From: Vitrella brassicaformis CCMP3155
Lineage: Eukaryota > Protista > Chromerida
Assembly (NCBI GenBank): GCA_001179505.1
Contig: CDMY01000378.1
Location: 30,403 to 94,402, forward strand
Direction: 5' to 3'
DNA length: 64,000 nucleotides
Shown here: in pieces, positions 42,905-64,000 of the stretch
Layout: each line of letters begins with the position of its first letter
How positions within the stretch are numbered: position 1 is the stretch's first letter
Notes under the pieces: generated by a model
The model's input: only the letters and a program-made list of their open reading frames with translations
What the model was told of the DNA's origin: nothing
Databases searched by the model: none
Position numbers and translations under genes: made by a program

Positions 42905-45510
42905 ATGCCGAACACTCAGAGCTCATCGGGGAGCAGCTGGGAGGTGCCTGCCAGGCCAGTGCCTGAGGACCTCAAGCAGCTGCACAAGCTTTATGGCGAC
43001 TCGGCCTTCGGCAAGACGCTCGCCAAGTGGGCCAAGGAGATGCCTGACGCGCGTGCCATCACCTGGCTGGACCGCAACAAGGACGAGCGGCTGCAGGAGA
43101 GCAAGACCTTCACATACCGGGAGCTCTTGAGGGAGGTGCAGCGGCTGGGTGCCTATCTGACTGACGAGCTGGGACTCGAGCTGGGTGATCGGGTGATCCT
43201 GTGCTACCCGCCCGGCGCCGACTTCAACATCGCCTTCCTCGCCTGCCTCTACACGGGCATCGTTGCAGTGCCCGTCATCCCCCCTGACCCCAGCAAGCTC
43301 AAGGTCGATGTGCCACGGTTGTGTGACATCGCCGAGAGCAGTGAGGCACGCCATGCGCTCACCAACGCCTACTACTCAAGGATCAAGATGGCCTTCGCCG
43401 TGCGCGCCCTGTCGGTGGACACCCGGTGGAGATCCATTGAGTGGCAGGTCCCCGCCAAAGTGATCGAGCACAAGAAGGGCGACGACACAGAGGCCGAGGC
43501 CACCCCCCCATCGATTGGCCTGAGCGACATCGCCTTCCTGCAGTTCACGTCGGGGTCCACATCGACGCCGAAGGGCGTGATGGTGACGCACGGCTCGCTG
43601 CTGCACAACGTCCACTGCTGCATCACGGCCTACGGCTGGGACAGCAAGCTCGACGACCCCACCATCCCCAACATCACAGCGACGGGGCAGCCCTACACCA
43701 GGACGCGCGACATCCTGTTGCAGCGGTCAGAGGTCAGCCAGCGGGTGCGGGGGCACCGCTTGAGGTGCTTCTCATGGCTCCCCGTCTACCACGACATGGG
43801 GCTCATCGGGTTCCTGTGCACGCCCCTCTTCTTTGGATGCGAAATTTTTCAAATGTCACCTCTGGAGTTCATCAAGACGCCGCATCTGTGGCTGCAAGGT
43901 ACGTACGCTGAAGGATCCTCATGCATCAATCCAATCAATCCATTCATTCATTCATTGGTGCGGTGCCTGCCTGTCTGCCTACCTGACCTGCGTGCATCTT
44001 GGTCTGCTCAGGCATGAGTCGATTCAAGGCTGATGCGTGTGCGGCGCCCAACTTCGCCTTTGAGCTGGTGGTGCGCAAGATGCCCGAGGACGTGTTCGAG
44101 GAGCTGGACCTCAGTCACGTGGCGGGCTTCCTCTGCGGAGCAGAGCCAATCAGGGCGGCCACCGTAGACAAATTCGTCAAGGTACTCACGGGCGTGTTTG
44201 AAGAGGGAGGGCGGCGGGCAATCAATGCATGGATCGACCAACAAAAGAGAACACGATGGCTGTCTGTGTCTGTGTTGTTTGTTTATTCACCATCATCAGA
44301 AATTCGCGAGCAAGGGTGTGACTCCCAGCAAGTTTCTGCCGGCATTTGGGTTGGCCGAGAACACCCTGTTTGTGTCGGGCCGCAAAGACATCGACAGCGA
44401 GCCTCTCATCATCACCGTCAACGCAATGAAACTCAGGAGCCAAGTGAGCCAACACAAGCAAACAACACACAAGCAAGCAATCAATCAATCAATCAGTGCT
44501 GCGAGGAAGCAGACAGACAGACAGACAGACATGCATCATCAGCACGGCACGGCGGGCATTTGCAAGCCACACACGTTCGTCTGTCTGTCTGTGGTGTTGC
44601 GTCTTGTGTGTGCAGGGTGTGGTTGAGTTGGTGGATGGAGCCGACATGGATGGCGAGCACGAGGGGGAGTACCAGCGGCTCGTCGGATGTGGCGTACCCT
44701 TCTCTGGCATTGACGGTACGCAAACCATCACTGAGGTCGCTCATCAGAGATTCATCGGTTTGCTTTGTCCTCTGTCATTCATTGCTGCAGTCCGTATTGT
44801 TGATCCCGAGACGATGAAGGAGCTGCCAGAGGGCCACTGTGGCGAGGTGTGGATGATGTCAGGCAGCACGGCTCGTGGCTACTTCAACCAGCCAGAGAAG
44901 ACGCAGGAGTCGTTCAATGGGCAGTGCATCTACCTGACAGGCGACAAGTCGGAGCCCTTGTACCTGCGCACAGGCGACAAGGGCTTCATCTACAAGGGGG
45001 AGCTGTTCATCGCCGGCCGCATCAAAGACATGATCATCGTCTACGGCCGCAACTACTTCCCGCAGGACATCGAGGAGGCCGCCGAGAGGTGCGAGGCGGT
45101 CCGCGGGGGAGGCGTCGCGGCCTTCTCGCTGGAGGTGGATGACCACGAGCGGCTGGGCCTGGCCGTGGAGATCAAGGAGACCAAGGAGGAGAAAGGCATG
45201 TGGGGATGGCTGTCGCGGCTGGGGCAGGGGGACGCCGGCAAGCAGCAGTACAAGGAGCTGAGCCGCGAGATATGCAAGGCCGTCTCGGGCAAGATCGGCC
45301 TGGCCGTCTACCGCATTTGGCTAGTCAAACCAAAAACCATAAGCAAGCACAAGACAAGTTCGGGTGAGGGGATGCGCTGCACACACTCACACGTACACAA
45401 AGGCGTGCCCGTCAAATTGATTCGTGCACTCCTTCTCCCCCTTTCCCTGTCTGTGTGGTCAGGCAAGGTGCGTCGTTTCAAGGTGCGTGACCTTCTTCTC
45501 AAGAAGGAGC
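42905..45510 (+). other. PKS loading domain: fatty acyl-AMP ligase (FAAL)
   Basis: DRVILCYPPG.DF..AFLACLYTG.VAVP; FLQFTSGSTSTPKGV; SWLPVYHDMGLIG; APNFAFEL; FGLAENT; YLRTGDKGF; GRIKDMII; KTSSGKVRR. Confidence 0.93.
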
Positions 45511-48500
45511 TGCCGGGTATCATCTGGGACGAGGTCGTGGGCCACGACACCCACAAGAAGGAGGCAGCAGCACAGCAGCAACCCACAGACGAGGCGGCAG
45601 CAGCGGCCGAGCCCAAGCCTGCCGCAGGAGCAGACAAGGAGGAGTCCCCGAGCGCCGCTGCTCGCAGGCGGCCGCCCAGCGCCCCTGTCGCCACACAGGA
45701 GGCAGCGAGGCGTGGCGAGAGGAGCGCCACCAAGGACCTTTCCATCGCAGAGAGGAGGGAGATGGTCCAGTCGGCAGTGGTGGCGTCGGCGGGCAAGATC
45801 CTCGGTGACGCCGACACATTTGACTTCGACGCGCCCCTTCACGAACTGGGTGTGGACTCGATCGGTGCGGTGGAGTTTGCCGAGGACGTGTCCAAGGCGC
45901 TGTCGCTGACCATCGAGCCCACGCTCGTCTTCAACTACCCCACCATGAACGACATCATCGACTTTCTCGTCGGCGAGCTCGAGGGCCGCGCCGCCGAGGA
46001 GGCCGCACAGGAGGGCGGCACACTGGTGGGCGGCATCCGGGCAGACGAGCCCATCGCCATTGTGGGTGCGGCGTGCCGTCTGCCGGGCGGCAGCTCGTCT
46101 CTGGAGTCGCTGTGGGAGCTGCTGAGCACAGGCGGCGATGCGATAGTGGAGGTGCCGCGGTCGCGGTGGGACGTGGACGAGCACTACGACCCCGACCCCG
46201 ACCTGGAAGGCAAGATGTACATACGGGAGGGCGGCTTCATCGACGACGCCGAGATGTTCGACGCCGCCTTCTTCCGAATCGGCCCAGCGGAGGCCAAGGC
46301 CATGGACCCCCAGCAGCGCGTGCTGCTCGAGGTCTCATACGCAGCCCTCCACAACGCGGGCTACTCGCGTGAGATGCTCACGCGCAGCCAGATCGGCGTG
46401 TTCGTCGGGTGCTGCTCATTCGACTGGTACCACGTGCACAACCAGATGGGCCTCAGCGTGAGCAGCTACAGCGCCACCAGCGCCGCGGCATCGATCCTCG
46501 GCAACCGCATCTCCTACATCCTCGGCCTGCAGGGACCGTCCATGACGGTCGACACGGCGTGCTCGTCATCGCTCGTCGCCCTCGACATTGCCATCTCCAA
46601 CCTGCGACGAGGTGTGTGCAGCACGTGTGTGGGCGCGGGCATGAACCTGATGCTCAATCCACAAGTCACGGTGGCCTTCTGCAAAGCGCGCATGATGGCG
46701 CCGGACGCCCGGTGCAAGACATTCGATGCGTCGGCCAACGGCTATGTGCGGGGCGAGGGCGGCGCCGCCATTGTCCTGAAGCGACTCTCTGACGCTTCAC
46801 CCGACTCGGTGGGCGTGTTGGCCTGTCTGCGAGGCACAGCCGTCAACCATGGGGGCAGGGCAGCCAGCCTCACAGCTCCCAGCGGCCCGGCCCAGCAGCA
46901 GGTCATCAGGTCGGCGCTGCGGCAGGCCGGCCTCCGACCATCATCAATCGACTTCGTGGAGACGCACGGCACGGGCACTTCACTCGGCGACCCCATCGAG
47001 GTGGGTGCCCTCAAGGCCGTGTTTGCGGGAGGGCGGGACTCGGAGCACCCGCTGCTGCTCGGCGCCCTCAAGACCAACATGGGCCACTTGGAGGGTGCGG
47101 CGGGGATTGCCGGCGTGCTGAAGGCGGTGCTGGTACTGCAGATGAACGAGGCCCCGCCAAACCTCCACTTCAGCTCCCTCAACCCCCACATCGACATCGA
47201 CGGCTTCCCCGTCGGATTCCCCAGTGGCACGGAGACCCTCCCACTCAAACCACCGCCCGGCAGGCGGCTGCTGGCCGGCGTTAGCTCATTCGGCTTCGGC
47301 GGCACCAACGCCCACGTCATCCTCGAGGAGGCGCCGCCAGACCTGGCTAAGCGGAGCGAGTCAGAGGCCATCAAGGAGCTCACCCCGTCGACTGCATTCC
47401 TATTCACCGGTCAGGGATGCGAGTATGTTGGCATGGGGCGGCAGCTGTACGAGAGAGAGCCCGAGTTTCGCCATGCTTTGGATCGATGCAACGACGAGCT
47501 CAAGCCGTTCCTGCCGGTGCAGCTGCTGGACCTGCTCTACCCCACTGCCGACCGCGTCAGCGAGATGGAGCAGCTCATGCGGCAGACCAAGTACGCCCAG
47601 CCGGCCCTCTTCGCCTTCGAGTGGTCACTGGCGCAGCTGTGGAAGTCCAAGGGAGTCGCCCCGGAGGTGGTCATCGGCCAGGGGCTGGGCGAGACTGTCG
47701 CGGCCGTCGTTGCGGGCGTCTTCAGCCTCGAGGACGGTCTGCAGCTGACGGCGCAGCGAGCCAGTATGTTGTCGGAGCTTCACGCCGGCGAAACGGTCAT
47801 GGCGGCGTGCCGAGCGAGCGAGGAGGAGGTGGAAGTGGCCATGGCGGAGGTGGGACCGGGCAACTGCAGCTCCGTGGCCCTCGCTGTCATCAACGGGCCC
47901 AAGAGTGTGGTGCTGTCGGGCAAGAAGGACGAGGTGGAGCTGGTGCTGCGGGCAATCGGGCTGCTCGCACACTGCAAGTACCTCCCTATCGACCTCCCCT
48001 TCCACTCGCCACTCATGAACGAGGCGGTCGCGCCGCTCGCTCAGCTCATGACGGCCTTCGACATGAACATGCCTCAGATGAGGATGGTGTCGGCGAGGAC
48101 CGGCGACTTTGTCGGCCGCGAGGTGTCCACAGCACGCTTCTGGGCGGAGGGCGTGGCGCAGCCTATGCGCTTCAGTGACGGCATTCGCACAGTGGTGGCA
48201 TCTGGCGCACGAGTCATGATCGAGATCGGCCCGAGGGAGATCCTCAAGAAGATGGCGCAGCAGAATGTGTCGGGCGAGACGGGCGAGCTGACGTGGATCG
48301 CATCTCTCCAGCAGGGCGTGGACGAGGTCGAGGGACTCAAGGAGGCCGTGCAGACCTGCGTCATAGCCCGCGATGCTGTGCATCGGCAGCAGTCACGTGA
48401 GCGGCGGGCGACCGAGGCGGGCATCCTGGTGTACCACCGGCAGCCCTTCCCATGGGTGGAGATCCCTCACCCCCTGCTGGGGCGGAAGCGCAAGACGACA

Positions 48501-51500
48501 GATAGGGGAGCTGTCCTCTTCGAGACGCCCTTCCCGCGACGCGCATACCCCCTGTTTGCCGACCATGTTGTCAACGGGACCCCCATCATGCCAGCAGCGG
48601 GGTTCATCGAGCTCCTTGCGGCGGCATCAGCCACCATGGACCTCAAGAGCCCCTCGGGCATCGTCGCCATCGAGACGGTGGCATTCGAGCGGCCCATGCA
48701 GCTCGGATTCCAGAAGCTCATGTACGAGTTCACGCCAAAGGACGCCGCGCTCCCGCCCATCTCCAGGCGTGGCCGCAAGACGCCCAAGATGATGCGCACG
48801 CCACGACGGGTGGCCGACGCCAAGACGCCACTCATGCGGACCCCAGGCCGGTCGGGATCCTTCATCTCGCCGCGCACCATGCTCAAGCACGCCGCCTCGA
48901 CGGGGTCCAACGTCGATTTGGGCAGCGAGATGTCTGGTGCTTTGCCCAACGACATCGGCATCAACGTGTGCTGCGAGGTGGCGCCTGACCGGCAGGTGGT
49001 GGTGAGCAGCCACCAGAAGGGCAGCACGGACGAGGAGGTCATGCACGTCACCGGTCGCATCTCACTCCCAGACGAAAACCTGGTCGGACTCGAGCCACAG
49101 CCAGACCTCATCGAGGACCTTCGCGCGCGCCTTACCGACTACGTGGACGTCTCTCTGATGTACGACCAACTCAATGACCTGGGGCTGCAGTACGGGCCGC
49201 GGTTCCGCACCATCCAGGAGATCGTCAAGGGACCGTCCGAGGCCGTCGCCCTTCTCAAGACGGCCGGCAATTGGGAGGCCTTCGAGAGTGGTTTCTCCAC
49301 GGTTCATCCCGCAGTGCTCGATGGGGCGCTGCAGGTGGCTGCCGTGCTGCTGCAGGATGCCGGCCCCGGGGCAGCCACGACGCGCAAGGCGATGATCCCT
49401 TTCTCTGTCGAGAAGACCGTTATGACGGTGGGCAGGCAGCAGCCGGGGTCGGAGGTGTGGGCACACATCACAATGGTGTCCAAGGAGGCCAGGTCGGCCA
49501 TCGTCAACGTGCACCTCCTCGACGCACGCGGCAACTTCGTGGCACGACTTGAGAAGGTCACGCTGAGGCAGGTCGATGTGGCTCCCGCGGCAGACATCCC
49601 CCGCGAGTTGCTGTGGGAGGTGGGATGGGTCAAGCCCCAGGCGGCAACGGCCAAGGAGGCGGCAGGGACGTCCATTCTGGTCGTCGGTGGTGATGCTGCC
49701 CTCAGCGATGCGCTCGCAGCCCACAGTGGCGACTTCGTCCCCTACGTGCCGGCCGACTCGTCCAAGGACACACTGGAGCGTGACGTGGAGAAGCTGCTGA
49801 TGGAGAATAGCTGGGCCGCCGTCCTCTACGTCGCTGCCGTCTGCCAGGTGCCCGTCACCTCGGGCATTCCTGAGGGCACGCAGGTGGTGTCCATCGTCGA
49901 GGACGCCCTCAAGATCTCGCGCGCCATCGGGGCAGTCATGTCGCAGGGCAAACACACCCTGCCGCCCGTGTGGTTCCTCACGGGCAACACGCAGCCCGTC
50001 CGGTCTCTGCATGACATGCAGTCACTGCCGGCACACAGCGGCCTGTGGGGCTTCACCCGAACCGCCCGGCTGGAGCTGGAGACGTCTGTTGGGACGACCG
50101 TGCGGCTGGGCTGTGTGGACGTGGACAGCAAAGCCACCGCTGACCCATCATCGATCGCATCTGTGTTGATGCGGGTGAGCCGCATGGACGGGACCGAGTC
50201 TGAGCTGGCCCTTCGCGATGACGACTGGTATGCGTCACGACTCGTCCCAAGCGCCCTCAAGGTTCAAGGTGCGATGGAGCTGCACATGCCTGACCGGGGC
50301 GCCATCTCCAACCTCATCTTGCGGCCTCAGTCCTATGCATCACGCAACCCACCCGCTACGGGTACGTGTGTGTCAAGCACTGAATGATGTGAGACAACAA
50401 GACAACATAGCGCTGTGTGAATGTGTTTCGGTCAGGCCAAGTGGAGATTCGCGTGAGGGCTGTCGGTTTGAATTTCCGCGACGTGTTGAATGTGATGGGT
50501 TTGTATCCTGGCGACCCCGGCCCGCCGGGCGGCGACTGTGCAGGCACTGTGGTGGCGCTGGGCGAGGGCGTCGACCACCTCTCGGTGGGCGATGATGTGT
50601 ACGGCGTGGCACCGGGCTGCCTGCGGACGTACGTGACGACGGATGCCTTCTTGATGTGCCACAAGCCAACCAAGATGAGCTTCGAGCAGGCGGCCGCCCT
50701 CCCAGTGGTCTACGTGACGGTCGAGGTGGCCTTCCGAGAGCTCGCCAAGGTCAAAAAGAGCGATCGAGTGCTCATCCACGCGGCATCGGGCGGCGTCGGG
50801 CTCGCGGCCATCCAGTACTGCAAGTCCGTCGGGGCGACTGTGTATGGCACGGCCGGCAGTCATGCCAAGCAGGACTTCCTGAGACAGCAGGGCGTGCAGT
50901 ACATCACTAGCTCACGTGACGCCACCCAGTTCCACAGTGACATGGTCAAGTTCCTCGGGAGCGATTCCAAGATCAGCGTCGTGCTCAACTGCCTGATTGA
51001 GGACTTCATCACGCACTCGGTGGATTTCCTGGGCCCCAAGGGCCGCTTCATGGAGCTGGGCAAGCGCGGCATCTGGACCAAGGACGAGATGGCCGACAAG
51101 CGGCCGGATGTATTCTACGAGACCATCGCCGTCGACCACATGATGGAGGAGAAGCCCAAGTGGTTCGGCAGCATGCTCGATCGGGTGCGTCAGATGGCCG
51201 AGGACGGCAAGATCGACGGGCTCCCCCTGCACGTCTTCGACATGACCAACCCGGATGTGTCGGTTGGCGGCACAGCGGCGTTCCGCTTCATGCAGCGCGC
51301 CCACCACATCGGCAAAGTGGTGCTACAGATCCCCAGCATCCTCTCCCCTCCAACCAGCAATGCAGCGGGGCAGGCAGTGCCCGAGGCCAGCACCTACGTG
51401 CTGTCGGGCGGCCTGGGTGCGCTAGGTCTGGTGGTCGCCGCGTGGCTGGTGGAGGAGGGCGTCAAGGACATCGTGCTGCTGTCGCGTCGCGGCGAGCCGC

Positions 51501-54500
51501 CCCCCGCAGGCACCAACCCCCAGTGGGAGTGGCTATCGGGCCTGTCGGCAACGGTGCGGATGAAGAAGTGCGATGTGTCACAGAGGTCGAGTGTGGAGCA
51601 GCTGTTCAAGGAGGTGGCCAGGGGCATGCCGCGAGTAGGGGGCATATTCCACGCCGCGGGCCTCATCGATGACCGCCTGCTCGCATCACAAACACGCGAG
51701 AGCATCAACAAAGTCTTCCAGCCCAAGGTGATGGGTGCCTGGAATCTCCATGAAGTGTCCAAGGACATCACTCTGGGCGAGTTCGTCATGTTTTCGTCCA
51801 TCGCATCGCTGTGGGGCAACTTCGGCCAGTCCAACTACTCGGCGGCCAACTCGTGTCTGGACGCCCTCGCCCTCTACCGCAAGTCGCAGGGCCTGCCGTG
51901 TCAGAGCATTCAGTGGGGACCGTGGATCGAGCAGGGAATGGCTATGGATCTGAAGAAGCACCTCGACAAGGTCGGTCTGAAGGGCATCGACAACGAGCTC
52001 GGCCTGCGTGTGCTGGGCAGCGTCATGATGAAACGGGGCCCGACCCTCTCTCCATCCACCGAGGGCGCCCAGGCGGGTGTGGTGGTCGGCTGCCAGGCCC
52101 TCAAGTGGAAGACCTTCCTGCGGCGATACCCCAACCAGCCGCCGCCCTTCTTTAGCAACGTGCAGAAGACCGTCAAGTCAGACAGCCAGGACACCGACTC
52201 CCTACTCAAGCGTATGGCACCACAGGAGCGCCGCGACTTCATCAAGTCGACCGTCCAGTCTACCGCCCGACAGGTGCTGGGCACATCCTCCCTCCCGCCG
52301 CTGGACTCGCCTCTGCAGGAGCTGGGCATCGACTCACTCGGCGCTGTCGAGTTCAGAAACGCCCTTTCGCGCAAGCTGGGTGTGAAGCTGCCAGCCACGA
52401 CTCTGTTCGACTACCCCACTCTGTCGGCCATCATCGACCACATCAACGAGCAGATGTCCGATGGCGACAAGGAGGCTGCAAAGGGGGCGGTGACGGCGGG
52501 CATGCCTGGAGGTGGCGTGCGGTATGAGGAGGGGCTGGCAGTGGTGGGCATGGCCTGCAACCTTCCGGGCGAGAGCACGAACATCGATGCCTTCTGGGAT
52601 ATGCTCATGAACAAGACCGACTGTATCATTGAGGTCCCGGTGGGGCGATGGAATCCGGACGAGGTATACGACGTCGACCCAGACGCCCCCGGCAAGTGCT
52701 ATGTGCGTGAGGGCGGCTTCATCAGCGGGGCGGAGATGTTTGACAACACGTTCTTCAACATCCCAACCTTTGAAGTGAACTGCATGGACCCCCAGCAGCG
52801 CGTGCTGCTGGAGACGGGATACACGGCCTTCGTGACGGCGGGCTACAACCGCGAGAAGCTCCTCGGCTCCTTTACGGGTGTCTTTGTGGGCGTGTGCAAC
52901 ACCGACTGGAGCTATCTCAACACGACCGACAAGATCGTCGCCTACACGGGCACCGGCAGCGCCTCATCTATTGTGGCGAACCGCATCTCGTACTTCTTTG
53001 GCCTCCGGGGGCCCTCGGTGTCGGTCGACACGGCATGCTCGTCGTCACTCGTCGCCCTCGACGCTGCCTCGGAGAAGCTGAGGAGTGGGGCCTGCAGCCT
53101 GGCACTTGCTGCTGGCGTCAATCTGATGCTCACTCCCCACCTGTTCATTGCCTTCTGCAAGGCCAGGATGCTGGCCACCGACGCGCGGTGCAAGACCTTC
53201 GATGAGCAGGCCAATGGGTACGTTAGGGGCGAGGGGGCTGGTGCCATCGTGCTGCAGCCCCTCAGGCAGGCCCAGCAGGAGAACCGCCAGATGTTTGCCA
53301 TAGTGAGGGGCTCTTGCGTCAACCATGATGGCCGGAGTGCCAGTCTGACCGCCCCGAACGGACCGTCCCAGCAGGAGGCCATCAGAGGGTAAGAAAGACA
53401 ATACGGGGTGGAGCAACGAACCAGACGACCATCGTTCTGCCCTGTGTGTGTCTGTGCAGAGCTCTTGCCCAGGCTGGTCTTGAGCCTGATGCTGTGGACT
53501 ACATTGAGAGCCACGGCACGGGCACCTCCCTGGGCGATCCGATTGAGCTGGGCGCTATCCGCGCCGTGATCCTCGACAAGCGGACCACTGACAGGCCGCT
53601 CGTGCTGGGTGCACTCAAGACTAACATTGGCCACTTGGAGGGATCCGCTGGCATATCGGGCATCATCAAGGCCGTGCTGGTGCTGCAACACCGCGTATCG
53701 CCGCCCAATCTTAACTTCACGTGCCTCAACGAGCACATAGACTTCGACGGCATGAGCGAGACGGCCGTGGTGTTCCCCACGGAGCCATGCCCCCTCAAAC
53801 CCAAGAAGGGCAAGAACCTGGTGGCCGGCGTGAGCTCATTTGGCTTCGGCGGCGCAAATGCCCACGTCATTCTTGAGGAGGCGCCCGCGGTGGCAGCCAA
53901 GGAGAAGAAGGCAGACAAGGAGCCCGTCAAGGTGGAGAAGAAGAAAGTGGCGTTTCTGTTCACCGGCCAGGGGTCGCAACATCTGGACATGGGCAAGCAG
54001 CTCTACGAGAGCGAGGAGGTGTTCCAGGAGAGCCTCGACCAGTGCATCCGCATCCTCGACCGCTACCTCGCGCCCGTCAAAGCCCTGGATATCCTCTTCC
54101 CGGGTGACGATGAGGAGGAGCGCCAGAAGATGCAGAAGCTTATCGACCAGACTCGGTTCTCCCAGCCGCTGATCTTTGCGGTCGAGTACTCGTTGGCTCA
54201 GCTGCTGCGGAGCCGTGGCGTGACGCCCGATGTGGTCATGGGCCACAGCCTGGGCGAGTATGTGGCCGCCACTATCGCAGGCGTCATGAGCCTCGAGGAC
54301 GGACTCAGGCTCATCGCAGAACGAGCACGAATCATGAACGACGCACCGCCGCGGGACGGGGTGATGGCCGCGTGTCGTCTGAGCGAGCAGGACGTCGCCA
54401 AGGGCATCGAGATGGTGGGCGAGGACAAGTGCAAGTCCGTCTCTGTGGCTGCCGTCAACGGGCCGAGGAGCATCGTGGTGTCGGGGACCCGCAGTGAGGT

Positions 54501-57500
54501 CGACTCGGTGATGAGGGTTCTGAATGTGGATAAGAAGTATCGGCTGTTGGCGGTATCGCATGCCTTCCACTCGCCGCTGATGGAGGACACCGTCCAGCCC
54601 TTCAAGGAGGTGCTCGCGTCCGTCCAGCTGAACAAGCCCTCCATCCCCCTGGTATCCAACGTCACAGGCAAGGTGGCTGGCAACGAGGTGCTCACCAGTG
54701 ACTTCTGGGCCGACCACATCACGCTGCCCGTGCGCTTCATGGACGGCATCAGGACCACCGTTGCCGAGGGCTGCAGAATCCTCGTGGAGGTTGGCCCCCG
54801 TCCAACTCTCATCAACCTCGGGAAGCAGTGTGTGGGTCGCGGCACCGGGTCGCCCGACAGCCTTAACTGGCTGGCGGTGCTCGAGCCGGGCAAGAGTGAG
54901 CTGTCGACTGTGTCTGCCGTCTTCCAGGAGATCGAGGCCAACCTGGCGCGGCCCGCAGAGGGGATCGAGGGGCTCTTCGAGAACAGGCGGGCATTCCCTT
55001 GGAAGGAAGTAAGCCATCCGCTTATCGGCAAGCAGGGCATCGGCGCAGACCGGTCAGTGGTCTTCGAGACACAGCTGCGCAAGGACGTGCAGCACCTTCT
55101 CGCAGACCACGTCGTGACAGGTGTTGCTGTGATGCCGGGTGCGGGCTACGTGGACCTCTTCGGTGCCCTGTGGACATCCACAGTGAGCAACGCCAGCCCC
55201 AACCAGCCCGTCTTCTTCGAGCAGGTAGCCTTCGACCGGCCCATGAAGGTCTTCACCGAGTCAGGCGGGGCGCCACAGCTCAAGTGCACCGTCAAGGGTC
55301 GCGAGGCCACCATCGCCACGGTTGCGCAGGAGGGCGAAGAGGAGACTGTCCACGCCACCGCCCGGCTGTCGACTGCCAGCTCGTCAAGGGCCCTTCAGGT
55401 GGCCGAGGGCGGCCTCAGAGAGGCCCAGGACACATGCACCACCAGCTTCGACGTCAAGGAGCTTTACCAGAGTCTACACTCACGCGGCCTCACCTACGGC
55501 CCCGCCTTCCAGACGCTCGTGTCCGTCAGTGGGGCAGCCAACGGCACTCTGGCCCTTGGCAAGCTCAAGTACCCGCCCTCATCGTCATTCGATTCGGCGT
55601 TCCGCCTCAACCCATGCGTGCTGGACGGCGCCCTGCAGGTGGCAGCTGTGCTCGTGGGGGCTGGCGGCAGCGGTGCCCGAGCCGCCAAGACTGCCATGGT
55701 GCCTATAGCCATCGACGAGGTCACCCTCAGCCGCGTGGTCCCGGGGACGCCTTTGTGGGCGGTCGTGGCTCTGCTGAGCAGCGAGAACAGCACGGCCAAG
55801 ATCGACGTGACCCTGTTCGAGGAGTCGGGCAAGGCCGTGGGCAAACTGGAGCGTGTGACGCTCAAGCAGGTGGACTTCACGCCGCAGGCGGAGATCCCGC
55901 GTGACCTGATCTGGACGGTGGACTGGGTGTCGGACGAGGAGTGGAAAAAGCTCAAGCTGGTCGATGAGGAGGGCGATGAGCGGGAGCGCATCGAGGACCC
56001 CAACGTGCCAAAGAAGGAAGACGTCTTCGACAACATGCGCACGCTCGTCGTGTGCCCGAACGAGGGCGTCATGGAGTGGACCGCATCCAACCTCACCGCG
56101 GCCGTCAAGACGCTCAACGTCATCCGCAAGGCGAGTGTGCCTGACGTTGCGGAGCTGGAGAGCGCCATGGAGGGCAGCAACATCATGTACATCTTCTATG
56201 CAACATCTCTCGACTCGACTGTCGACCCCATTGAGGCCCTGGACGGTCTGCGGCAGCTGTGCGTCAACAGCGCTGAGATTTGCAAGGCCTCCAACGGCGT
56301 CAAGAGCATCCGCATCTGGGTGCTCACAACTGGCATCCACTCAGTCGACGAGAGCCGCCCGCCGCGCAACATGCCACCCCACTCTGGCGTGTGGGGCTTC
56401 GCACGCACGGCACGCGTCGAGAACGAGATGCTGGGTGTGCGCGACCTCATGGTTGCCGTCGCTGATGTGCCCAGCTCGGGGATCTCTCTTGTCGAGAGCG
56501 AGATGGAGCACCTGCTCGACTTCATTGCGGAGAAGGGCGACACAGAGCCCGAGGTGGTCATCCGCAGCGAGTCACGATTCGTCAGCCGACTCACCTACGG
56601 CAAGCTGGAGATCAGGGGGGCCGCGGAGCTGCACATGAGCTCGCGAGGCGCCATCTCCAACCTCAAGCTGAGACCCTTGTCAGCCGACGCCAGAGTGCCG
56701 CCAACCAACGAGCTCGTGGAGGTTCGTGTTCGAGCGATCGGTTTGAATTTCCGCGACGTGTTGAACGTGATGGGTCTTTATCCTGGCGACCCCGGCCCGC
56801 CGGGCGGCGACTGCTCGGGGACGGTAGTGGGTGTGGGGGAGGGCGTGAGTCACTTGTGTGTTGGGGATGACGTCTACGGCGTGGCGCCGGGCTGCCTGCG
56901 GACGTACGTGACGACGGACGCCAACCTGATGGCCATCAAGCCCGCATCGATGACCTTCGAAGAGGCGGCCGCCCTGCCGGTCGTCTTTGTGACGGTCGAG
57001 GTCGCATTCCGAGAGCTCGCCAAGGTCACCAAGGGAGACAACGTCCTCGTACACGCGGCATCGGGCGGCGTCGGGCTTGCGGCCATCCAGTACTGCAAGG
57101 CCGTCGGGGCCAATGTCTATGGCACGGCCGGCAGCCAGCACAAACAGGACTTCCTACGACAACAGGGCGTGCACTTGGTCACGAGCTCGCGCGACGCCAG
57201 CCAGTTCCATGCCGACATGCACAAGGCCAACAGCAAGATGAACGTCGTCCTCAACTGCCTCATCGAGGACTTCATTCCCTTCTCGCTCGACGCCATGGCA
57301 CCCAAGGGCCGCTTCATGGAGCTCGGCAAGCGCGGCATCTGGAGCAAAGAGGAGGTCCTCGCCAGGCGGCCCGACTTGGCCATGTACGAGGCCATCGCCG
57401 TCGATCACATGATGGAGCAAGATCCCAAGTGGTTCGGCGCCATGCTCGACCGCGTCCGGGGCCTGGTCGACAGCGGCAAGATCAAACCCATCCCCCTCCA

Positions 57501-60500
57501 CACATTCGACATGAGCACCGCAGACAACGTCACCGGCGGCATCGCGGCCTTCAGGTTTATGCAGAGGGCGCAGCACATCGGCAAGGTCATCATACAGATA
57601 CCCTCAGCCATCGCACCGCCCCACACAGACGACGCACAGCGCCACGAGGCGACACCGGCCGACCGCCAAACTGACGGATGCTATGTCATCACCGGAGGGC
57701 TCGGCGGACTCGGACTCCTCGTCGCAGACTGGCTCGTTGATGNNNNNNNNNNNNNNNNNNNNNNNNNNNNNNNNNNNNNNNNNNNNNNNNNNNNNNNNNN
57801 NNNNNNNNNNNNNNNNNNNNNNNNNNNNNNNNNNNNNNNNNNNNNNNNNNNNNNNNNNNNNNNNNNNNNNNNNNNNNNNNNNNNNNNNNNNNNNNNNNNN
57901 NNNNNNNNNNNNNNNNNNNNNNNNNNNNNNNNNNNNNNNNNNNNNNNNNNNNNNNNNNNNNNNNNNNNNNNNNNNNNNNNNNNNNNNNNNNNNNNNNNNN
58001 NNNNNNNNNNNNNNNNNNNNNNNNNNNNNNNNNNNNNNNNNNGTGCTATGCCGCTACCCCCTCCGACGTGATGTCAAGAAGCTGTTCCTTGACCACGTCG
58101 TGTCCAACCAGTGCCTGATGCCCGGAGCGGGCTTTGTCGACATGCTGGCGAGCCTGGCCGCCTCCCCCGAGCACCCCGCACGCATGTGGAGTGGCACTGT
58201 TGTGTTGCTGGAGGATGTAGCTATCGAGCAGCCCATGTTCATCGGTGAGCAGGCCATTCAGGTGACGGGTCGCCTCGAGCCCGGTGGCTCGGCGGAGATC
58301 TGCAGCCGTCTCATCGAGGGCGATCAACCACAAGGCGACGAGAGCTCCCATGCGTCAGCTCGTGTCAGGGTGGCCGGCCAGCCTATGAATGCCAATGGCG
58401 AGACCCTCGAGACGCTCAGCAACCGCTGCTCCCTCGAGCTGTCGACGCGGGCATTCTACCGCGAGCTCAGTGGCCTCGGTCTCAACTACGGCACACGGTT
58501 CAGGACTGTATCTGAGCTCTACAGTGGCCACAACGAGGTGCTGGCGAAGCTCTCCCTGGCTGACAGAGAGGGGTATGAGGACGGCTTCCTCACCCATCCC
58601 GCCATCCTCGACGGTGCCTTCCAGTCAATCGCAGTCCTGCTCCACCCCGACCCCCGGCAGCTCAAGTCAATGGGCCCCCGCGAGCCCACCAGGGGCACGT
58701 CGGGCTCGAGTCCCACCGCCAACAGCCGCGCCAACAGCCGCGCCAACAGCCGCGCCAACAGCCGCGCCAACAGCCCCGCTGCATCGCCCAGCCGCGGCAC
58801 CAAGCTCCAGCCGATGGTCCCTGTCGGGGCTCATCAGGCGACCCTCACGAAGATGCAGTTCAAGGACTGCTGGGCCCACGTGACGCTCGTGGCGAGGGAG
58901 GGGGCCACCGCCAAGGCCAACGTCACCCTCTACCAGGTCAAGGCGGACGCAGCACTTGCAGACGATGCAGCGTCGTCCGGCCAGACGCCCCTCATAAAGG
59001 TGGCAGACATCACGGAGCTCTCCCTTCGCAAGATCGAGCTGGCATCGGTAGTGGACATCCCTCGTGAGCTCATGTGGAAGGCCGAATGGAACAAGCGGGC
59101 CGAGCCAGATGCGGAGGCGCCACCCGTCCAGACCAAACCGGTCCTGGTGGTGAGCAGCAATGCTGCCTTTGCAGAGGCTGTGGCCAAGGCAATTGAGGTC
59201 GACGGCAACACTGGTGTGGTGGCCGACTCGCGAGACAAGGTTGTGTCGCTGCTCAAGGAAAGGGAGTTTGGCAGCCTCGTGTACCTCGCCCCCATGGAGA
59301 CGACTGGCAGTGCAGTGGATGTCATGTCCGGCCTGCTGGACATCTGCCAAGCCCTGCTGGTCCTCAAAGACACCAAGGCGCCCGTCGTGTGGACCGTGAC
59401 GCCCAAGACTGTCAAGGTGCTCGACGACGAGGCCTTCCTTGGCCCCCCTGTGCACGCCGGTGTGGTGGGATTTGCCAAAACAGCACGCCTGGAGATCGGC
59501 ATGGAGAAAGGCGAGGCCAACGGGCGCATCGGCTGCATCGATTTTGACATGCCGGTCGACCACAAGAACCCGCGGGCACTTGCGGACGCTGTCGTGAGTG
59601 TTGTGTCGAGGCAAGAAGAGCAGCCGTTTGAGAGTGAGATCGCCGTGCGGGGAGGAGAGCAGTATGTTGCCCGTCTGGCACGCGACAAGATCGCTGTAAA
59701 GGGGCCGATCGAGCTCAACATGAGCGAGAGGGGTGCAATCTCCAACCTGGCGCTGCGGCCTCAGTCACAGGAGCTGCGAGTCGACGCCATGGCTGCCGGC
59801 TCCAACTATGTCGAGGTTCGTGTTCGAGCGATCGGATTGAATTTCCGCGACGTGTTGAACGTGATGGGTCTTTATCCTGGCGACCCCGGCCCGCCGGGCG
59901 GCGACTGCTCGGGGACGGTAGTGGGTGTGGGGGAGGGCGTGAGTCACTTGTGTGTTGGGGATGACGTCTACGGCGTGGCGCCGGGCTGCCTGCGGACGTA
60001 CGTGACGACGGACGCCAACCTGATGGCCATCAAGCCCGCATCGATGACCTTCGAAGAGGCGGCCGCCCTGCCGGTCGTCTTTGTGACGGTCGAGGTCGCA
60101 TTCCGAGAGCTCGCCAAGGTCACCAAGGGAGACAACGTCCTCGTACACGCGGCATCGGGCGGCGTCGGGCTTGCGGCCATCCAGTACTGCAAGGCCGTCG
60201 GGGCCAATGTCTATGGCACGGCCGGCAGCCAGCACAAACAGGACTTCCTACGACAACAGGGCGTGCAGTATATCACCAGTTCACGTGACGCAAAGGTCTT
60301 CAAAACAGAGATGACGGGCTTCCTCGGCGGAGACGCCAAGGTCGACGTCGTCCTCAACTGTCTCATCGAGGATTTCATCCCCAATTCAGTTGACCTGATG
60401 GCACCGAACGGCCGCTTCATGGAGTTGGGCAAGCGGGGCATTTGGACCAAGGACGAGATGAGCAAGGAGAGGCCCGACATCATGTATGAGACCATCGCCG

Positions 60501-63500
60501 TCGACCACATGATGGAGGAGAATCCCAAATGGTTTGGTGGAATGCTCGATCGCGTGCGGCGCATGGTGGATGACGGCAAGATCAAAGCCATCCCCTTGCA
60601 TGTGTTCAACCTCCTCAGCAGCGACACGAAGGTCGGAGGCATCGCTGCATTTCGCTTCATGCAGCGTGCCCAGCACATCGGCAAAGTCATCATCCAGATC
60701 CCCTCGGCGTTGCGGTCTCCCTTCCTCGAGCCACATGTCGCTGCCACAACCAACAAGTCTGATGGTGTCTATCTCATCACTGGAGGGCTCGGTGGCCTCG
60801 GGCTGCTCGTGGCGAACTGGCTGGTCGATGAGGGTGCCAAACACATTGCCCTGGTGTCACGAAGGGGCCAGCCGACCGACGAGACGAAGAGCTCGGCTCT
60901 GTGGAAGAGGCTTACTGCCCCCGCTCCTCAAGGCAAGACATCAGCGACGGTGCGGTGCTTCGCCTGTGACGTGTCGAGCAAGCAGGAGTGCGAGAGGCTG
61001 CTAGGGGACGTAGAGAGTGTCTTCTCGGACAAGCACCCGCTGCTCGGTATCTTGCATGCAGCTGGTGTGCTGGATGATTCGGTGATGAGCAAGCAGACAA
61101 AGGAGAGCATCACCAAAGTCTATTTGCCAAAGGTAAAGAGTGGATGAAGAGGGAACATACGAGGATATTGATAGTTGGATACGCTTGTTGTGTCTTGTCG
61201 TCTGCTAGGTGCAAGGAGCTATGAATCTGCACGATCTCACTATCGCGCGCCACATGGAGCTGGACTATTTTGTGATGTACTCGTCCGTCGCATCTCTGTT
61301 TGGCAACTTCGGCCAGTCCAACTACTCGGCGGCCAACTCGTGTCTGGACGCCTTGACTGAGTACCGCCGCTCCAAGAAGCTCGCCGCCCAAAGCATCCAG
61401 TGGGGACCATGGACAGAACAGGGCATGGCGGCAGACCTCACACAATATTTGGACAAGGTCGGCATGCGCGGCATCACCAACGAGCTCGGCCTTCGGGTGC
61501 TCGGCGATGTCATGCGCAACAATTCCCTCACGTCGACGGTACGGACCGTCGGGTGCCAGGCCCTCGTGTGGCGCAAGTTCCTCGACCGGTACAACCGCGT
61601 GCCTAACTTCTTCAGCCGCATCGAGGTGGGCGGCAGCGGCATCGCCGGCGCATCAGCTCATCTTAAGGGCATGTCACCCGAGAAGCGCCGCGAGTTCATC
61701 TCCAAGACCGTCATTGACGCCTGCGCCAACGTGTTGGGTACCAACGAGCCTCCCCCCGTGGACCAGCCCCTGCAGGCCCTCGGCGTCGACTCACTGGGTG
61801 CTGTGGAGTTCCGCAACATGCTGTCCACCAAGCTGGGCGTCAAGCTGCCAGCGACAACCATGTTCGACTACCCCACTCTGTCGGCCATCATTGACTTCAT
61901 CGAGAGGGAGCTGTCGGGATCGGACAGTGAGACCGCCGACGAGACTCAGCTGGCCATGCAGAACCTGCCGCTGTCGGCTGACGCCAACCTGACGAATCTG
62001 GCGGTCATGGGGATGTCCTGCCGGCTGCCGGGCAACAGCAACACGCCTGTGGAGTTCTGGGAGATGCTCATGGATAAGACGGACTGCATGGTCGACACGC
62101 CGCTGACCCGGTGGGACTACATCGAGTTCTACTCGGCCGACCCTGACGAGGGCGGCAAGACCTACTCGACGCAGGGCGGGTTCATCAGCAACGGCGACCT
62201 CTTCGACCACAACTTCTTCACCATCAAGCCCATGGAGGTGTGGAGCATGGACCCCCAGCAGCGCCTCATCGCCGAGGTCGCTTACGAGGCCGTCTACTCG
62301 GCCAACGTCCGCAAGGACCAGCTCATGGGCAAGGCATACGGATGCTTCATCGGGTGCTGCAATGGAGATTGGAACTTCGTCGATCTCGACCAGAAGACAC
62401 AGGGGCTCGACTCATACAAGAGCAGCAGCTACTCGGGCACTGGAGGAGCCATGAGCCTCATGTCAAACAGAATCTCATACGTCTTCGGCCTCAGGGGTCC
62501 GTCCATGACCATCGACACCGCGTGCTCGTCCTCACTCGTCGCCATGGACGCCGCCGTCAAGAACACGCGTCTCGGCCTCTGCAAGGGCGCCATTGTGGGC
62601 GGTGTGAATCTGATGATGTCGCCCCACCTCTTCGTTGCATTCTCCAAGGCACGCATGCTTTCACCCGACTGTCGATGCAAGACCTTCGACGCCAAGGCCA
62701 ACGGCTATGTGAGGGGCGAGGGTGCTGGCGCGGCATTCCTACTGGCCACAAGTCAGCTGACTGAGAACGACCGGCCGCTGGCCACGGTCCTCGGCTCGTC
62801 AGTCAACCATGACGGGACAAGCGCCAGCCTGACGGCCCCCAATGGGCCAGCCCAGCAGGAGGTCCTTCGCGGCGCTCTCGCCATGGCCGGCCTCAAGTCG
62901 TCTGCGGTGTCGTACATCGAGGCACACGGAACTGGCACTTCTCTCGGGGACCCCATCGAGTTCGGTGCTCTCAAGGCTGTGTTCGGTCCGGGCCGCAGCG
63001 ACAACAATCCTCTTGTGCTGGGTGCACTCAAGACCAACATCGGCCACCTGGAGGGATCGGCTGGCATCTCCGGCTTCATCAAGCTTGTGATGACACTGAT
63101 CCATGGCAAGGCCGCGCCCAACCTGCACTTCACGGAGCTCAACCCCCACATTGACAGCGAGGGCTTCCCGTTCCAGTACGAGACAGCGGCGGTCGACTTC
63201 GCCGGCCGCACCGGCCAGAAGCAGATGGTCGGCGGCGTCAGCTCGTTCGGCTTCGGTGGTGCCAACGCACACATTCTGGTGGAGGCAAGCACGTCGACTC
63301 TGCCTGTGCTCGAGAGTATGCACGCCAAGAAGCCCGAATGGAAGCACCGTCGTTTCCCGTGGGTGCCCGTGCAGCACCCTGTCCTGGGCCAGAAGAGCAC
63401 CGAGGCACACGGCGGTGTGCTATGCCGCTACCCCCTCCGACGTGATGTCAAGAAGCTGTTCCTTGACCACGTCGTGTCCAACCAGTGCCTGATGCCCGGA

Positions 63501-64000
63501 GCGGGCTTTGTCGACATGCTGGCGAGCCTGGCCGCCTCCCCCGAGCACCCCGCACGCATGTGGAGTGGCACTGTTGTGTTGCTGGAGGATGTAGCTATCG
63601 AGCAGCCCATGTTCATCGGTGAGCAGGCCATTCAGGTGACGGGTCGCCTCGAGCCCGGTGGCTCGGCGGAGATCTGCAGCCGTCTCATCGAGGGCGATCA
63701 ACCACAAGGCGACGAGAGCTCCCATGCGTCAGCTCGTGTCAGGGTGGCCGGCCAGCCTATGAATGCCAATGGCGAGACCCTCGAGACGCTCAGCAACCGC
63801 TGCTCCCTCGAGCTGTCGACGCGGGCATTCTACCGCGAGCTCAGTGGCCTCGGTCTCAACTACGGCACACGGTTCAGGACTGTATCTGAGCTCTACAGTG
63901 GCCACAACGAGGTGCTGGCGAAACTCTCCCTGGCTGACAGAGAGGGGTATGAGGACGGCTTCCTCACCCATCCCGCCATCCTCGACGGTGCCTTCCAGTC
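42905..64000 (+). CDS. Giant modular type I PKS/FAS: FAAL-ACP-[KS-AT0-DH-ER-KR-ACP]-[KS-AT-DH-ER-KR..gap..]-[..DH-ER-KR-ACP]-[KS-DH..]; truncated by the window end
   Basis: Domain motifs read from ORFs 42893-44017, 44496-50387, 50417-53392, 53446-57742, 58043-61132, plus an unlisted open frame 61209-64000. Introns start at 43899, 44182, 44443, 44716, 45364, 50363, 53389 and 61133. Confidence 0.97.
45750..45985 (+). other. Loading ACP
   Basis: LHELGVDSIGAVEF (Ser at 45858-45860) ... LVFNYPT. Confidence 0.92.
46045..52450 (+). other. Module 1: KS, degenerate AT, DH, ER, KR, ACP
   Basis: KS DTACSSS / ETHGTGT / KTNMGH; AT GQGLGE; DH HVVNGTPIMP and LDGALQ; ER HAASGGVG; KR GGLGALG, HAAGLIDD, NYSAAN; ACP LGIDSLG. 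Confidence 0.92.
52530..57742 (+). other. Module 2: KS, active malonyl-type AT, DH, ER, start of KR
   Basis: KS DTACSSS / ESHGTGT / KTNIGH; AT GHSLGE (54241) and VSHAFHS; DH HVVTGVAVMP and LDGALQ; ER HAASGGVG; KR YVITGGLGGLG cut by the gap. Confidence 0.92.
56719..57173 (+). repeat. Direct repeat of 59813-60267 (ER domain, offset 3094 bp)
   Basis: 455 bp with one mismatch seen (GGT vs GGA, Gly). The antisense ORFs 56680-57141 and 59765-60235 in the track are also near-identical. Confidence 0.95.
57743..58042. other. Assembly gap (300 N) inside the PKS
   Basis: Run of N. The PKS reading frame differs on the two sides, so the gap size is nominal. Confidence 0.99.
58043..58626 (+). repeat. Direct repeat of 63417-64000 (DH domain, offset 5374 bp)
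   Basis: Manual alignment: 584 bp with one mismatch (58549 g vs 63923 a, synonymous Lys). The match is bounded by the gap and the window end, so it may be longer. Confidence 0.97.
58718..58776 (+). repeat. In-frame 12-bp tandem repeat (GCCAACAGCCGC)x4 plus a partial copy, encoding ANSR x4-ANSP
   Basis: Read directly, within DH of module 3. Confidence 0.95.
61995..64000 (+). other. Module 4 (partial): KS followed directly by DH, no AT
   Basis: KS DTACSSS / EAHGTGT / KTNIGH ending SFGFGGANAHILVE, then about 18 aa, then WKHRRFPW..HPVLG and DH HVVSNQCLMP. Confidence 0.92.

What the first reader, a model, noticed from the sequence alone, without database searches (positions are those of the whole stretch)
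42905..64000. Giant FAAL-initiated megasynthase with one catalytic AT for at least four modules (hybrid cis/trans-AT logic)
Seen: module 1 AT has GQGLGE instead of GHSLGE, module 2 AT is intact and malonyl-type (GHSLG, HAFH), and module 4 has no AT. Module 3's DH is near-identical to module 4's, suggesting the same AT-less design. All three visible KS triads and ACP serines are intact. Established: FAAL-ACP loading followed by KS-AT-DH-ER-KR-ACP modules is the architecture of Cryptosporidium CpFAS1-type synthases, and AT-less modules need an AT acting in trans. Inference: the single embedded AT may load every ACP on the same polypeptide, or a discrete AT does, as in trans-AT systems.
Basis: partly seen in the sequence, partly recalled or inferred. 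Interest (0 to 1): 0.88.

Follow-up and report, generated by a model that had tools for sequence, protein, structure and literature searches.

The report
Algal giant fatty-acid synthase missing acyltransferases
This is the front 21 kb of an expressed giant fatty-acid/polyketide synthase gene of the alga Vitrella brassicaformis in which one acyltransferase is dead, one is intact and one has been cleanly deleted; such acyltransferase-poor synthases are already catalogued in chromerid algae, so it is a well-documented example and not a new kind of enzyme.

Summary
The gene starts at ATG 42905 with a FAAL-like adenylation domain and ACP. AT1 reads GQGLGE and AT2 reads GHSLGE with HAFH. The last visible KS joins DH through about 25-30 residues with no AT. 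All three visible KS triads and all three visible ACP serines are intact.

The gap at 57743-58042 is not continuous. Its left edge is the start of KR2, its right edge is the start of a DH, and at least 2.6 kb is missing. N=300 is a placeholder. The DH segment right of the gap is a multi-copy family, so the module and AT count cannot be fixed from this window.

"One catalytic AT for at least four modules" is therefore only partly supported. Visible modules that have a dead AT or no AT must be loaded in trans. The Chromera velia relative has one AT for three KS. That AT sits in its last module, and a Vitrella paralogue also carries intact ATs, so further ATs downstream are plausible. The only candidate stand-alone AT found was a fragment of another synthase.

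AT-less modules in chromerid FAS-I/PKS and algal trans-AT logic are published (PMC7464705, PMC4661987). The scan also noted similar architectures on other DNA of this genome (s1-201694, s1-248730; unchecked).

New detail: intact, dead and deleted ATs occur in one polypeptide. Interest is moderate to low.

The parts
42905..45770 (+). FAAL-like adenylation (loading) domain, split by at least 3 GT-AG introns (about 43.9-44.0, 44.18-44.30 and 44.45-44.6 kb)
   Evidence: Pfam AMP-binding 1.9e-41. Best PDB and NCBIfam matches are fatty acyl-AMP ligases, including a PKS FAAL domain (7r7e), 3kxw, FadD23/28/32 and PRK05850. Exon reading.
45774..45968 (+). Loading ACP (ACP0), GVDS serine intact
   Evidence: PP-binding 7.5e-12; motif at nt 45849
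46047..47171 (+). KS1, Cys-His-His intact
47397..48341 (+). AT1, full-length but dead. It reads GQGLGE instead of GHSLGE, GQGCE instead of GQGSQ (the TgPKS2 on/off position) and LPFH instead of HAFH. The oxyanion Gln, the Arg and the catalytic His are kept.
   Evidence: Acyl_transf_1 156.7 bits over profile positions 2-306 of 319; alignment with AT2; codons; PMC9301873 for the on/off residue
48468..49583 (+). DH1 (HxxxGxxxxP and DGALQ present)
50362..50435 (+). Intron (GT..AG, 74 nt) between DH1 and ER1
   Evidence: Removing it together with 53389-53459 gives a stop-free 4383-aa product from 44448 to 57742
50436..52444 (+). ER1-KR1-ACP1 (NADPH motifs, KR Ser/Tyr/Asn and ACP GIDS intact)
52535..53718 (+). 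KS2, Cys-His-His intact, interrupted by a 71-nt GT-AG intron at 53389-53459
53953..54834 (+). AT2, intact malonyl-type (GQGSQ, GHSLGE, Arg, HAFH)
   Evidence: Acyl_transf_1 176.7 bits; motifs; FabD and PKS AT models
55015..57742 (+). DH2-ER2 and the first ~15-20 residues of KR2, cut by the gap
57743..58042 (.). Assembly gap, a 300-N placeholder. It hides at least 2.6 kb: the rest of KR2, an ACP, a KS, possibly an AT and possibly whole extra modules.
   Evidence: The flanks are different domains in different frames. The two gaps in paralogue L001 are also exactly 300 N. A variant contig runs 444 nt into the gap.
58043..61901 (+). DH3-ER3-KR3-ACP3 of a later module. The first 584 nt are 99.83% identical to DH4. 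KR3 holds a 76-nt intron at 61133-61208.
   Evidence: A spliced contig with joint 61130->61207, GT..AG, is seen only in run X1, so the gene is expressed.
61998..63131 (+). KS4, Cys-His-His intact
63132..63374 (+). Short KS-to-DH linker with the AT cleanly absent. The boundaries match those of the two AT-less modules of the Chromera velia relative.
   Evidence: Alignments. Words of this stretch are held by several runs, including independent sediment metagenomes.
63375..64000 (+). DH4 N-terminal part; the gene runs off the window

Best explanation
The stretch is the 5' part of an expressed, intron-containing nuclear gene of Vitrella brassicaformis. The gene encodes a FAAL-primed, fully reducing type I megasynthase, a CpFAS1-like fatty-acyl elongase. 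Shown: the FAAL activates a fatty acid onto the loading ACP, and each KS-(AT)-DH-ER-KR-ACP module has the residues needed to add one fully reduced C2 unit. Shown: AT1 is kept as a folded domain but lacks its nucleophile, AT2 is an intact malonyl-type AT, and a later module has no AT at all. Inferred: the ACPs of the modules with a dead AT or no AT receive malonyl in trans from an AT embedded in the same, probably dimeric, synthase. That donor would be AT2 plus any ATs in the unseen gap and 3' part. This mirrors the Chromera relative, where one AT serves three KS. Inferred from relatives only: the chain is released by a terminal reductase, with a sulfotransferase following, to give a very-long-chain alcohol or sulfated lipid.
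For: Canonical GT-AG introns and a spliced contig show a real, expressed eukaryotic gene. AT excision is clean and falls at the same boundaries as in Chromera velia P0001. P0001 reads ACP-KS-DH-ER-KR-ACP-KS-DH-ER-KR-ACP-KS-AT-DH-ER-KR-ACP-R-ST, with 3 KS and 1 GHSLGE AT. The only short AT-like protein of Vitrella among the best 120 hits (P0262, 68% identical to AT2) is a fragment of another synthase with a KS tail and a DH start, not a discrete AT. No AT, PPTase or TE gene was seen upstream in the window. Ser-less ATs are rare: 3 of 309 ATs in the giant synthases fetched. CpFAS1 architecture and its elongase role are given in PMC2995488.
Against: No biochemical evidence exists for any protist that an embedded AT loads foreign ACPs. 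The gap and the 3' part are unseen, so other cis-ATs may serve some of these modules. The search for discrete ATs was limited: 8000 word-sharing candidates were scored, 120 were listed, and only annotated proteins were covered. A cytosolic FabD-like enzyme could have been missed.
Confidence: 0.6

Rival explanations
1. A separate enzyme loads the AT-less modules, as in classical trans-AT systems. It could be a stand-alone cytosolic AT, a FabD-like MCAT, or the AT of a paralogous synthase such as the one at L001.
For: Algal multimodular PKSs are generally read as depending on free-standing ATs (PMC4661987). Vitrella has many AT-bearing paralogues, and L001 carries at least two intact ATs.
Against: The one short AT protein of Vitrella found is a gene-model fragment. 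The only stand-alone AT listed for Vitrella in PMC7464705 is the plastid-targeted FabD (Vbra_21812). The Chromera relative keeps exactly one AT inside the polypeptide, which would be unnecessary if a discrete AT did the job.
Confidence: 0.25
2. The modules with a dead AT or no AT do not elongate. Module 1 is skipped or acts only as a relay, as proposed for bacterial modules with Ser-less ATs.
For: PMC9301873 notes module skipping or early termination in bacterial lines with Ser-less ATs (bengamide, desertomycin, conglobatin, gephyronic acid).
Against: The KS, DH, ER, KR and ACP residues of these modules are all intact. The AT-less design is kept in Chromera with intact KS domains.
Confidence: 0.08
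3. The AT-poor picture is an assembly artefact of collapsed, near-identical modules.
For: The gap is a placeholder and DH segments are multi-copy. Variant unitigs stand at 3-4 times the flank depth. The first 584 nt after the gap repeat 5.4 kb downstream.
Against: AT1, AT2 and the KS4-DH4 junction all lie in uninterrupted sequence with open frames. The same junction exists in an independent Chromera assembly. Words of the junction occur in several runs and in sediment metagenomes.
Confidence: 0.04

Closest known systems
Cryptosporidium parvum CpFAS1 (PMC2995488)
   Same: Acyl ligase plus ACP loading unit, followed by fully reducing KS-AT-DH-ER-KR-ACP modules on one polypeptide. It acts as a fatty-acyl elongase. 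Relatives of the Vitrella gene end in a reductase, as CpFAS1 does.
   Different: CpFAS1 has an AT in each of its three modules and no introns. Here one AT is dead and one module has none. The C-terminus is not in the window.
Chromera velia A0A0G4G... protein (P0001, 6729 aa; same species and length as 'Type I FAS' Cvel_19857.t1 of PMC7464705)
   Same: Closest representative, with 51% identity over KS4-DH4. It has the same AT-less KS-DH linker boundaries, fully reducing modules and one GHSLGE/HAFH AT for three KS.
   Different: Its AT sits in the last module. The model holds no dead AT and no FAAL. It ends in R plus sulfotransferase, which cannot be checked here.
Algal multimodular AT-less (trans-AT) type I PKSs (Shelest et al. 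2015, PMC4661987)
   Same: Multimodular, most modules without an integrated AT, and near-identical duplicated modules. EhuPKS9 is noted there as a multimodular PKS with a single cis AT.
   Different: Those are mostly chlorophyte and haptophyte enzymes read as fully AT-less. Here intact, dead and deleted ATs coexist, and all modules are FAS-like fully reducing.
Toxoplasma gondii TgPKS2, inactive AT3 (PMC9301873)
   Same: An apicomplexan-lineage synthase carrying an AT that is folded but inactive. AT1 here also deviates at the same on/off position: Glu where active ATs have Gln.
   Different: TgPKS2 AT3 keeps GHSLG and is switched off by Gln to His alone. AT1 here has also lost the nucleophile Ser and the preceding His.
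Bacterial trans-AT PKSs and mixed cis/trans lines such as kirromycin (the latter from my own knowledge, not tested)
   Same: AT-less modules must be acylated in trans.
   Different: The KS domains here do not group with the KSs of the one bacterial trans-AT synthase included, Roseibium P0008. No discrete AT gene was found. The KS-DH linker is much shorter than the flanking subdomain usually kept after bacterial trans-AT KSs (my knowledge).

Membership tests
CpFAS1-type alveolate type I FAS | N-terminal acyl ligase (FAAL-like) plus ACP loading unit | tested here: met
   AMP-binding followed by PP-binding; best matches are FAALs
CpFAS1-type alveolate type I FAS | Every module holds a complete KS-AT-DH-ER-KR-ACP set | tested here: not met
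   AT1 lacks Ser. The module of KS4 has no AT.
CpFAS1-type alveolate type I FAS | C-terminal reductase release domain | not testable with these tools
   The gene runs off the window at 64000. R is present in Chromera P0001 and Vitrella L001.
Chromerid FAS-I/PKS megasynthases (PMC7464705) | Giant multimodular enzyme with at least one AT-less module, with KS in the chromerid/apicomplexan clade | tested here: met
   KS2 and KS4 fall in a starred (95) clade with Chromera KSs. All three window KSs lie in a eukaryotic clade (99) with Besnoitia and a choanoflagellate.
Bacterial-type trans-AT PKS | No integrated AT in elongation modules | tested here: not met
   Two integrated AT domains, one of them intact
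Bacterial-type trans-AT PKS | Discrete AT encoded separately | tested here: inconclusive
   The only short Vitrella AT hit is a PKS fragment, and there is none in the window. The whole genome could not be searched.
Bacterial-type trans-AT PKS | KS domains belong to the trans-AT KS clade | tested here: not met
   The window KSs are separated from the trans-AT KSs of Roseibium P0008 (97) and sit in a eukaryotic clade. AT presence changes at least 6 times on the tree.
Fatty acyl-AMP ligase (FAAL) | FAAL-specific insertion that blocks CoA ligation | not tested
   Only overall similarity to FAALs was shown. The exons of the C-terminal part were not assembled.

The most novel reading that the evidence does not exclude
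The complete protein has a single catalytic AT (AT2). That AT acts repeatedly, as an intramolecular trans-AT, on all ACPs of its own polypeptide, with no discrete AT in the cell. The gene would then be a living intermediate of the cis-to-trans AT displacement proposed for algal PKSs, showing intact, dead and deleted ATs side by side.
Probability: 0.2. Interest if true: 0.6.

Novelty: new member of a known kind. Interest (0 to 1): 0.35.

Why it matters
How AT-less modules of protist megasynthases get their malonyl units has never been tested biochemically. PMC4661987 states that the order of AT displacement and module duplication is unknown. This gene offers a compact test case: an intact AT, a retained dead AT and a cleanly excised AT, all in one expressed polypeptide and next to FAS-like modules whose product length is easy to predict. 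It also shows that short-read chromerid assemblies cannot be trusted for module or AT counts. The gaps are placeholders, and module segments are multi-copy. Beyond that, the architecture matches what is already catalogued for chromerids.

Tried and rejected
- a protein search with the 369 residues right of the gap, meant to recover read-contig fragments running into the gap, scored nothing. The upstream 444 nt of the variant contig stayed unreadable, because only 30 letters of loose end are shown.
- a search with the Chromera protein, to recover the full-length Vitrella gene model, listed no Vitrella protein. The Vbra gene id and the 3' end remain unknown.
- P0262, named 'Malonyl-CoA:ACP transacylase' of Vitrella, looked like a discrete trans-AT. 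I rejected it because it starts with a KS tail, ends in a DH start and lies inside a gapped PKS locus.
- I guessed from lengths that P0029 and P0069 were chromerid proteins. One search shows they are metagenomic and unnamed, so I dropped them.
- The metagenome scan gave only relatives at 52-53% identity (KR-ACP-KS-AT-DH-ER-KR). Neither is a copy of this gene, so the gap could not be bridged.
- Depth is summed unitig word depth. I use it only as a hint of 3-4 extra DH copies, not as a copy number.
- Looking beyond 64000 through earlier notes failed.
- The supplements of PMC7464705 hold no domain tables.
Full report
**What is in the sequence**

On the + strand from 42.9 kb to the window's end there is one long coding region. 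It is broken into stop-free pieces in changing frames. The breaks are canonical GT-AG introns:
- 50362-50435 and 53389-53459. Removing these two gives a stop-free 4383-residue product from 44448 to 57742.
- 61133-61208.
- At least three introns in the adenylation domain.

A contig of run X1 carries the joint 61130->61207 (76 nt, GT..AG). The DNA-type runs lack it, so the gene is spliced and expressed.

Pfam gives this order:
- AMP-binding, ACP
- KS1-AT1-DH1-ER1-KR1-ACP1
- KS2-AT2-DH2-ER2-KR2 (first ~15-20 residues only)
- gap
- DH3-ER3-KR3-ACP3
- KS4-DH4 (cut by the window end)

The ATG at 42905 opens the first exon. The adenylation domain matches fatty acyl-AMP ligases best, including a PKS FAAL domain, 3kxw and FadD23/28/32.

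**Catalytic residues**

- KS1, KS2 and KS4 keep Cys-His-His.
- The three visible ACPs keep GxDS.
- All four DHs keep the His motif and DGA(L/F)Q. The ERs keep the NADPH motif. KR1 and KR3 keep the Ser, Tyr and Asn residues.
- The modules are therefore FAS-like and fully reducing.
- AT2 has GQGSQ, GHSLGE, the Arg and HAFH. This is the malonyl fingerprint described in PMC9301873.
- AT1 is full-length (157 bits, profile 2-306 of 319) and 44% identical to AT2 by tblastn.
- AT1 reads GQGLGE (ggc cag ggg against ggc cac agc, three base changes).
- AT1 has LPFH for HAFH, and Glu at the position three residues after the oxyanion Gln. That is the 'on/off' position of TgPKS2 ATs, where the 263 ATs surveyed had only Gln or His (PMC9301873).
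- Among 309 AT domains in the giant synthases fetched here, 306 keep the Ser and 3 have Gly. A Ser-less AT is real but rare.

**The AT-less module**

KS4 ends at 63131 and DH4 starts at 63375 in one open frame. Aligned with modules 1 and 2, the KS-AT linker, the AT and the post-AT linker (about 340 residues) are cleanly absent. tblastn finds no third AT anywhere in the window.

The same junction, with the same boundaries, occurs twice in a Chromera velia protein from an independent assembly. Words of the 341-nt junction stretch are held by several runs, including marine sediment metagenomes. I therefore reject an assembly artefact for this junction.

**The gap (the test asked for)**

The two sides are not continuous.
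- The left edge is just inside KR2 (GGLGGLG at 57697).
- The right edge is position 28 of the DH N-terminal profile.
- The frames differ.

Using KR3 to DH4 as a ruler (60785 to 63417), at least 2586 nt are missing. About 3.6 kb are missing if the hidden module has an AT, and more if whole modules are hidden. The two gaps in paralogue L001 are also exactly 300 N, so 300 is a placeholder.

The 584 nt after the gap are 99.83% identical to 63417-64000, a period of 5374 nt. Public unitigs over 58043-59150 are mostly a variant about 3% divergent, with a 48-nt in-frame deletion. They stand at roughly 3-4 times the word depth of the unique flank, while the KR3 stretch is near 1x. One such contig runs 444 nt into the gap. 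Its last 30 letters match the DH4 N-terminus at 28 of 30. This does not say whether an AT lies further upstream.

The depth is summed word depth and only a hint. Even so, the DH segment is clearly a multi-copy family, and the module count cannot be read from this window.

**Organism and relatives**

Earlier notes name Vitrella brassicaformis. Two results agree with that:
- The best short AT hit is a V. brassicaformis CCMP3155 protein.
- Its locus L001 (CDMY01000231.1) shares an ER-KR stretch 93.5% identical in DNA with the window.

That protein, P0262, is named malonyl-CoA:ACP transacylase but is not a discrete AT. It begins with a KS tail and ends in a DH start. It lies in a gapped synthase locus that reads [KS tail]-AT-DH..gap..AT-DH-ER-KR-ACP..gap..KR-ACP-R-sulfotransferase.

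The closest representative of KS4-DH4 is Chromera velia P0001 (51% identity, 6729 aa). It reads ACP-KS-DH-ER-KR-ACP-KS-DH-ER-KR-ACP-KS-AT-DH-ER-KR-ACP-R-sulfotransferase, with three KS and one GHSLGE/HAFH AT in the last module. A second Chromera protein, P0024, also has a single AT for several KS.

In a KS tree, KS domains group by protein, and AT presence changes at least six times on well-supported branches. KS4 is sister (99) to an AT-bearing environmental KS. All window KSs sit in a eukaryotic clade, apart from the KSs of the one bacterial trans-AT synthase included, Roseibium P0008. This looks like repeated AT loss, or concerted evolution, inside a cis-AT-type lineage. It does not show membership of the bacterial trans-AT family.

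**Mechanism**

Shown: there is a FAAL-ACP loader, there are fully reducing modules, and two visible condensing modules lack a working cis-AT.

Inferred: their ACPs are malonylated in trans. I favour an embedded AT (0.6) for three reasons:
- The Chromera relative keeps exactly one AT inside the polypeptide.
- No discrete PKS-type AT of Vitrella appeared among the best hits.
- The window holds no accessory AT gene.

The rivals are a discrete or paralogous AT (0.25), module skipping (0.08) and assembly artefact (0.04).

The statement 'one catalytic AT' for the whole protein is not established. Relatives carry ATs in terminal modules, so I put it at about 0.2.

**Comparison with the literature**

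- PMC7464705 lists giant FAS-I/PKS enzymes of both chromerids. It states that all contain at least one module lacking an AT, and calls this a hallmark of algal type I PKS.
- PMC4661987 describes algal multimodular PKSs as AT-less, with near-identical duplicated modules, and one haptophyte enzyme with a single cis AT.
- PMC2995488 gives the CpFAS1 architecture.
- PMC9301873 shows an inactive AT in TgPKS2 and calls Ser-less ATs rare.
- The scan's own notes report similar 'one AT for several modules' genes elsewhere in this genome (s1-201694, s1-248730; not checked by me).

**Verdict**

This is a new member of a known kind.

The new detail is the coexistence of intact, dead and deleted ATs in one expressed polypeptide, with AT1 altered at four active-site positions. 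Interest is 0.35.

Noticed in passing
L001:10001-11386 (CDMY01000231.1, Vitrella brassicaformis): The public gene model named 'Malonyl-CoA:ACP transacylase' (461 aa) is a fragment of a gapped megasynthase. It has a KS tail, an AT and a DH start. The locus continues to KR-ACP-reductase-sulfotransferase and has two 300-N gaps.
   Followed up: yes
window 58717-58764: Unitigs from the DNA-type runs X5 and X7 and from X1 carry a variant of the DH3/DH4 segment with a 48-nt in-frame deletion and about 3% substitutions. Their word depth is 3-4 times that of the unique flank, so further near-identical DH copies exist somewhere in the genome.
   Followed up: partly
window 56800-57600 and 59800-60200: The ER core stretches reach word depths 10-40 times the flank in all four runs. 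ER2 is 93.5% identical in DNA to the ER of paralogue L001. ER sequences seem to be homogenised across many modules and genes.
   Followed up: partly
window 55200-57742 and 63080-63420: Marine sediment and microbial-mat metagenome runs hold up to 0.57 of the sampled 31-mers of this gene. Near-identical Vitrella-like DNA therefore occurs in environmental samples.
   Followed up: no
L002 and L003 (JAAUYM010019160.1, JAAUYK010154909.1): Metagenome contigs at 63% GC encode a 52-53% identical KR-ACP-KS-AT-DH-ER-KR module. Its KS is the sister of the AT-less KS4 in the tree.
   Followed up: partly
P0001 residues 5882-6655 (Chromera velia); L001:17074-21337: Relatives end in a reductase followed by a sulfotransferase domain. 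This suggests release as an alcohol and sulfation, a terminus not described for CpFAS1.
   Followed up: no
P0060: A 3920-aa, four-module cis-AT PKS is recorded as an uncharacterised protein of the sperm whale (Physeter catodon). It is probably a contaminant in that assembly.
   Followed up: no
window 40455-41576 (- strand): A PQ-loop (cystinosin-type) gene lies just upstream on the opposite strand. No lipid or PKS accessory genes were seen in the 42 kb upstream.
   Followed up: partly
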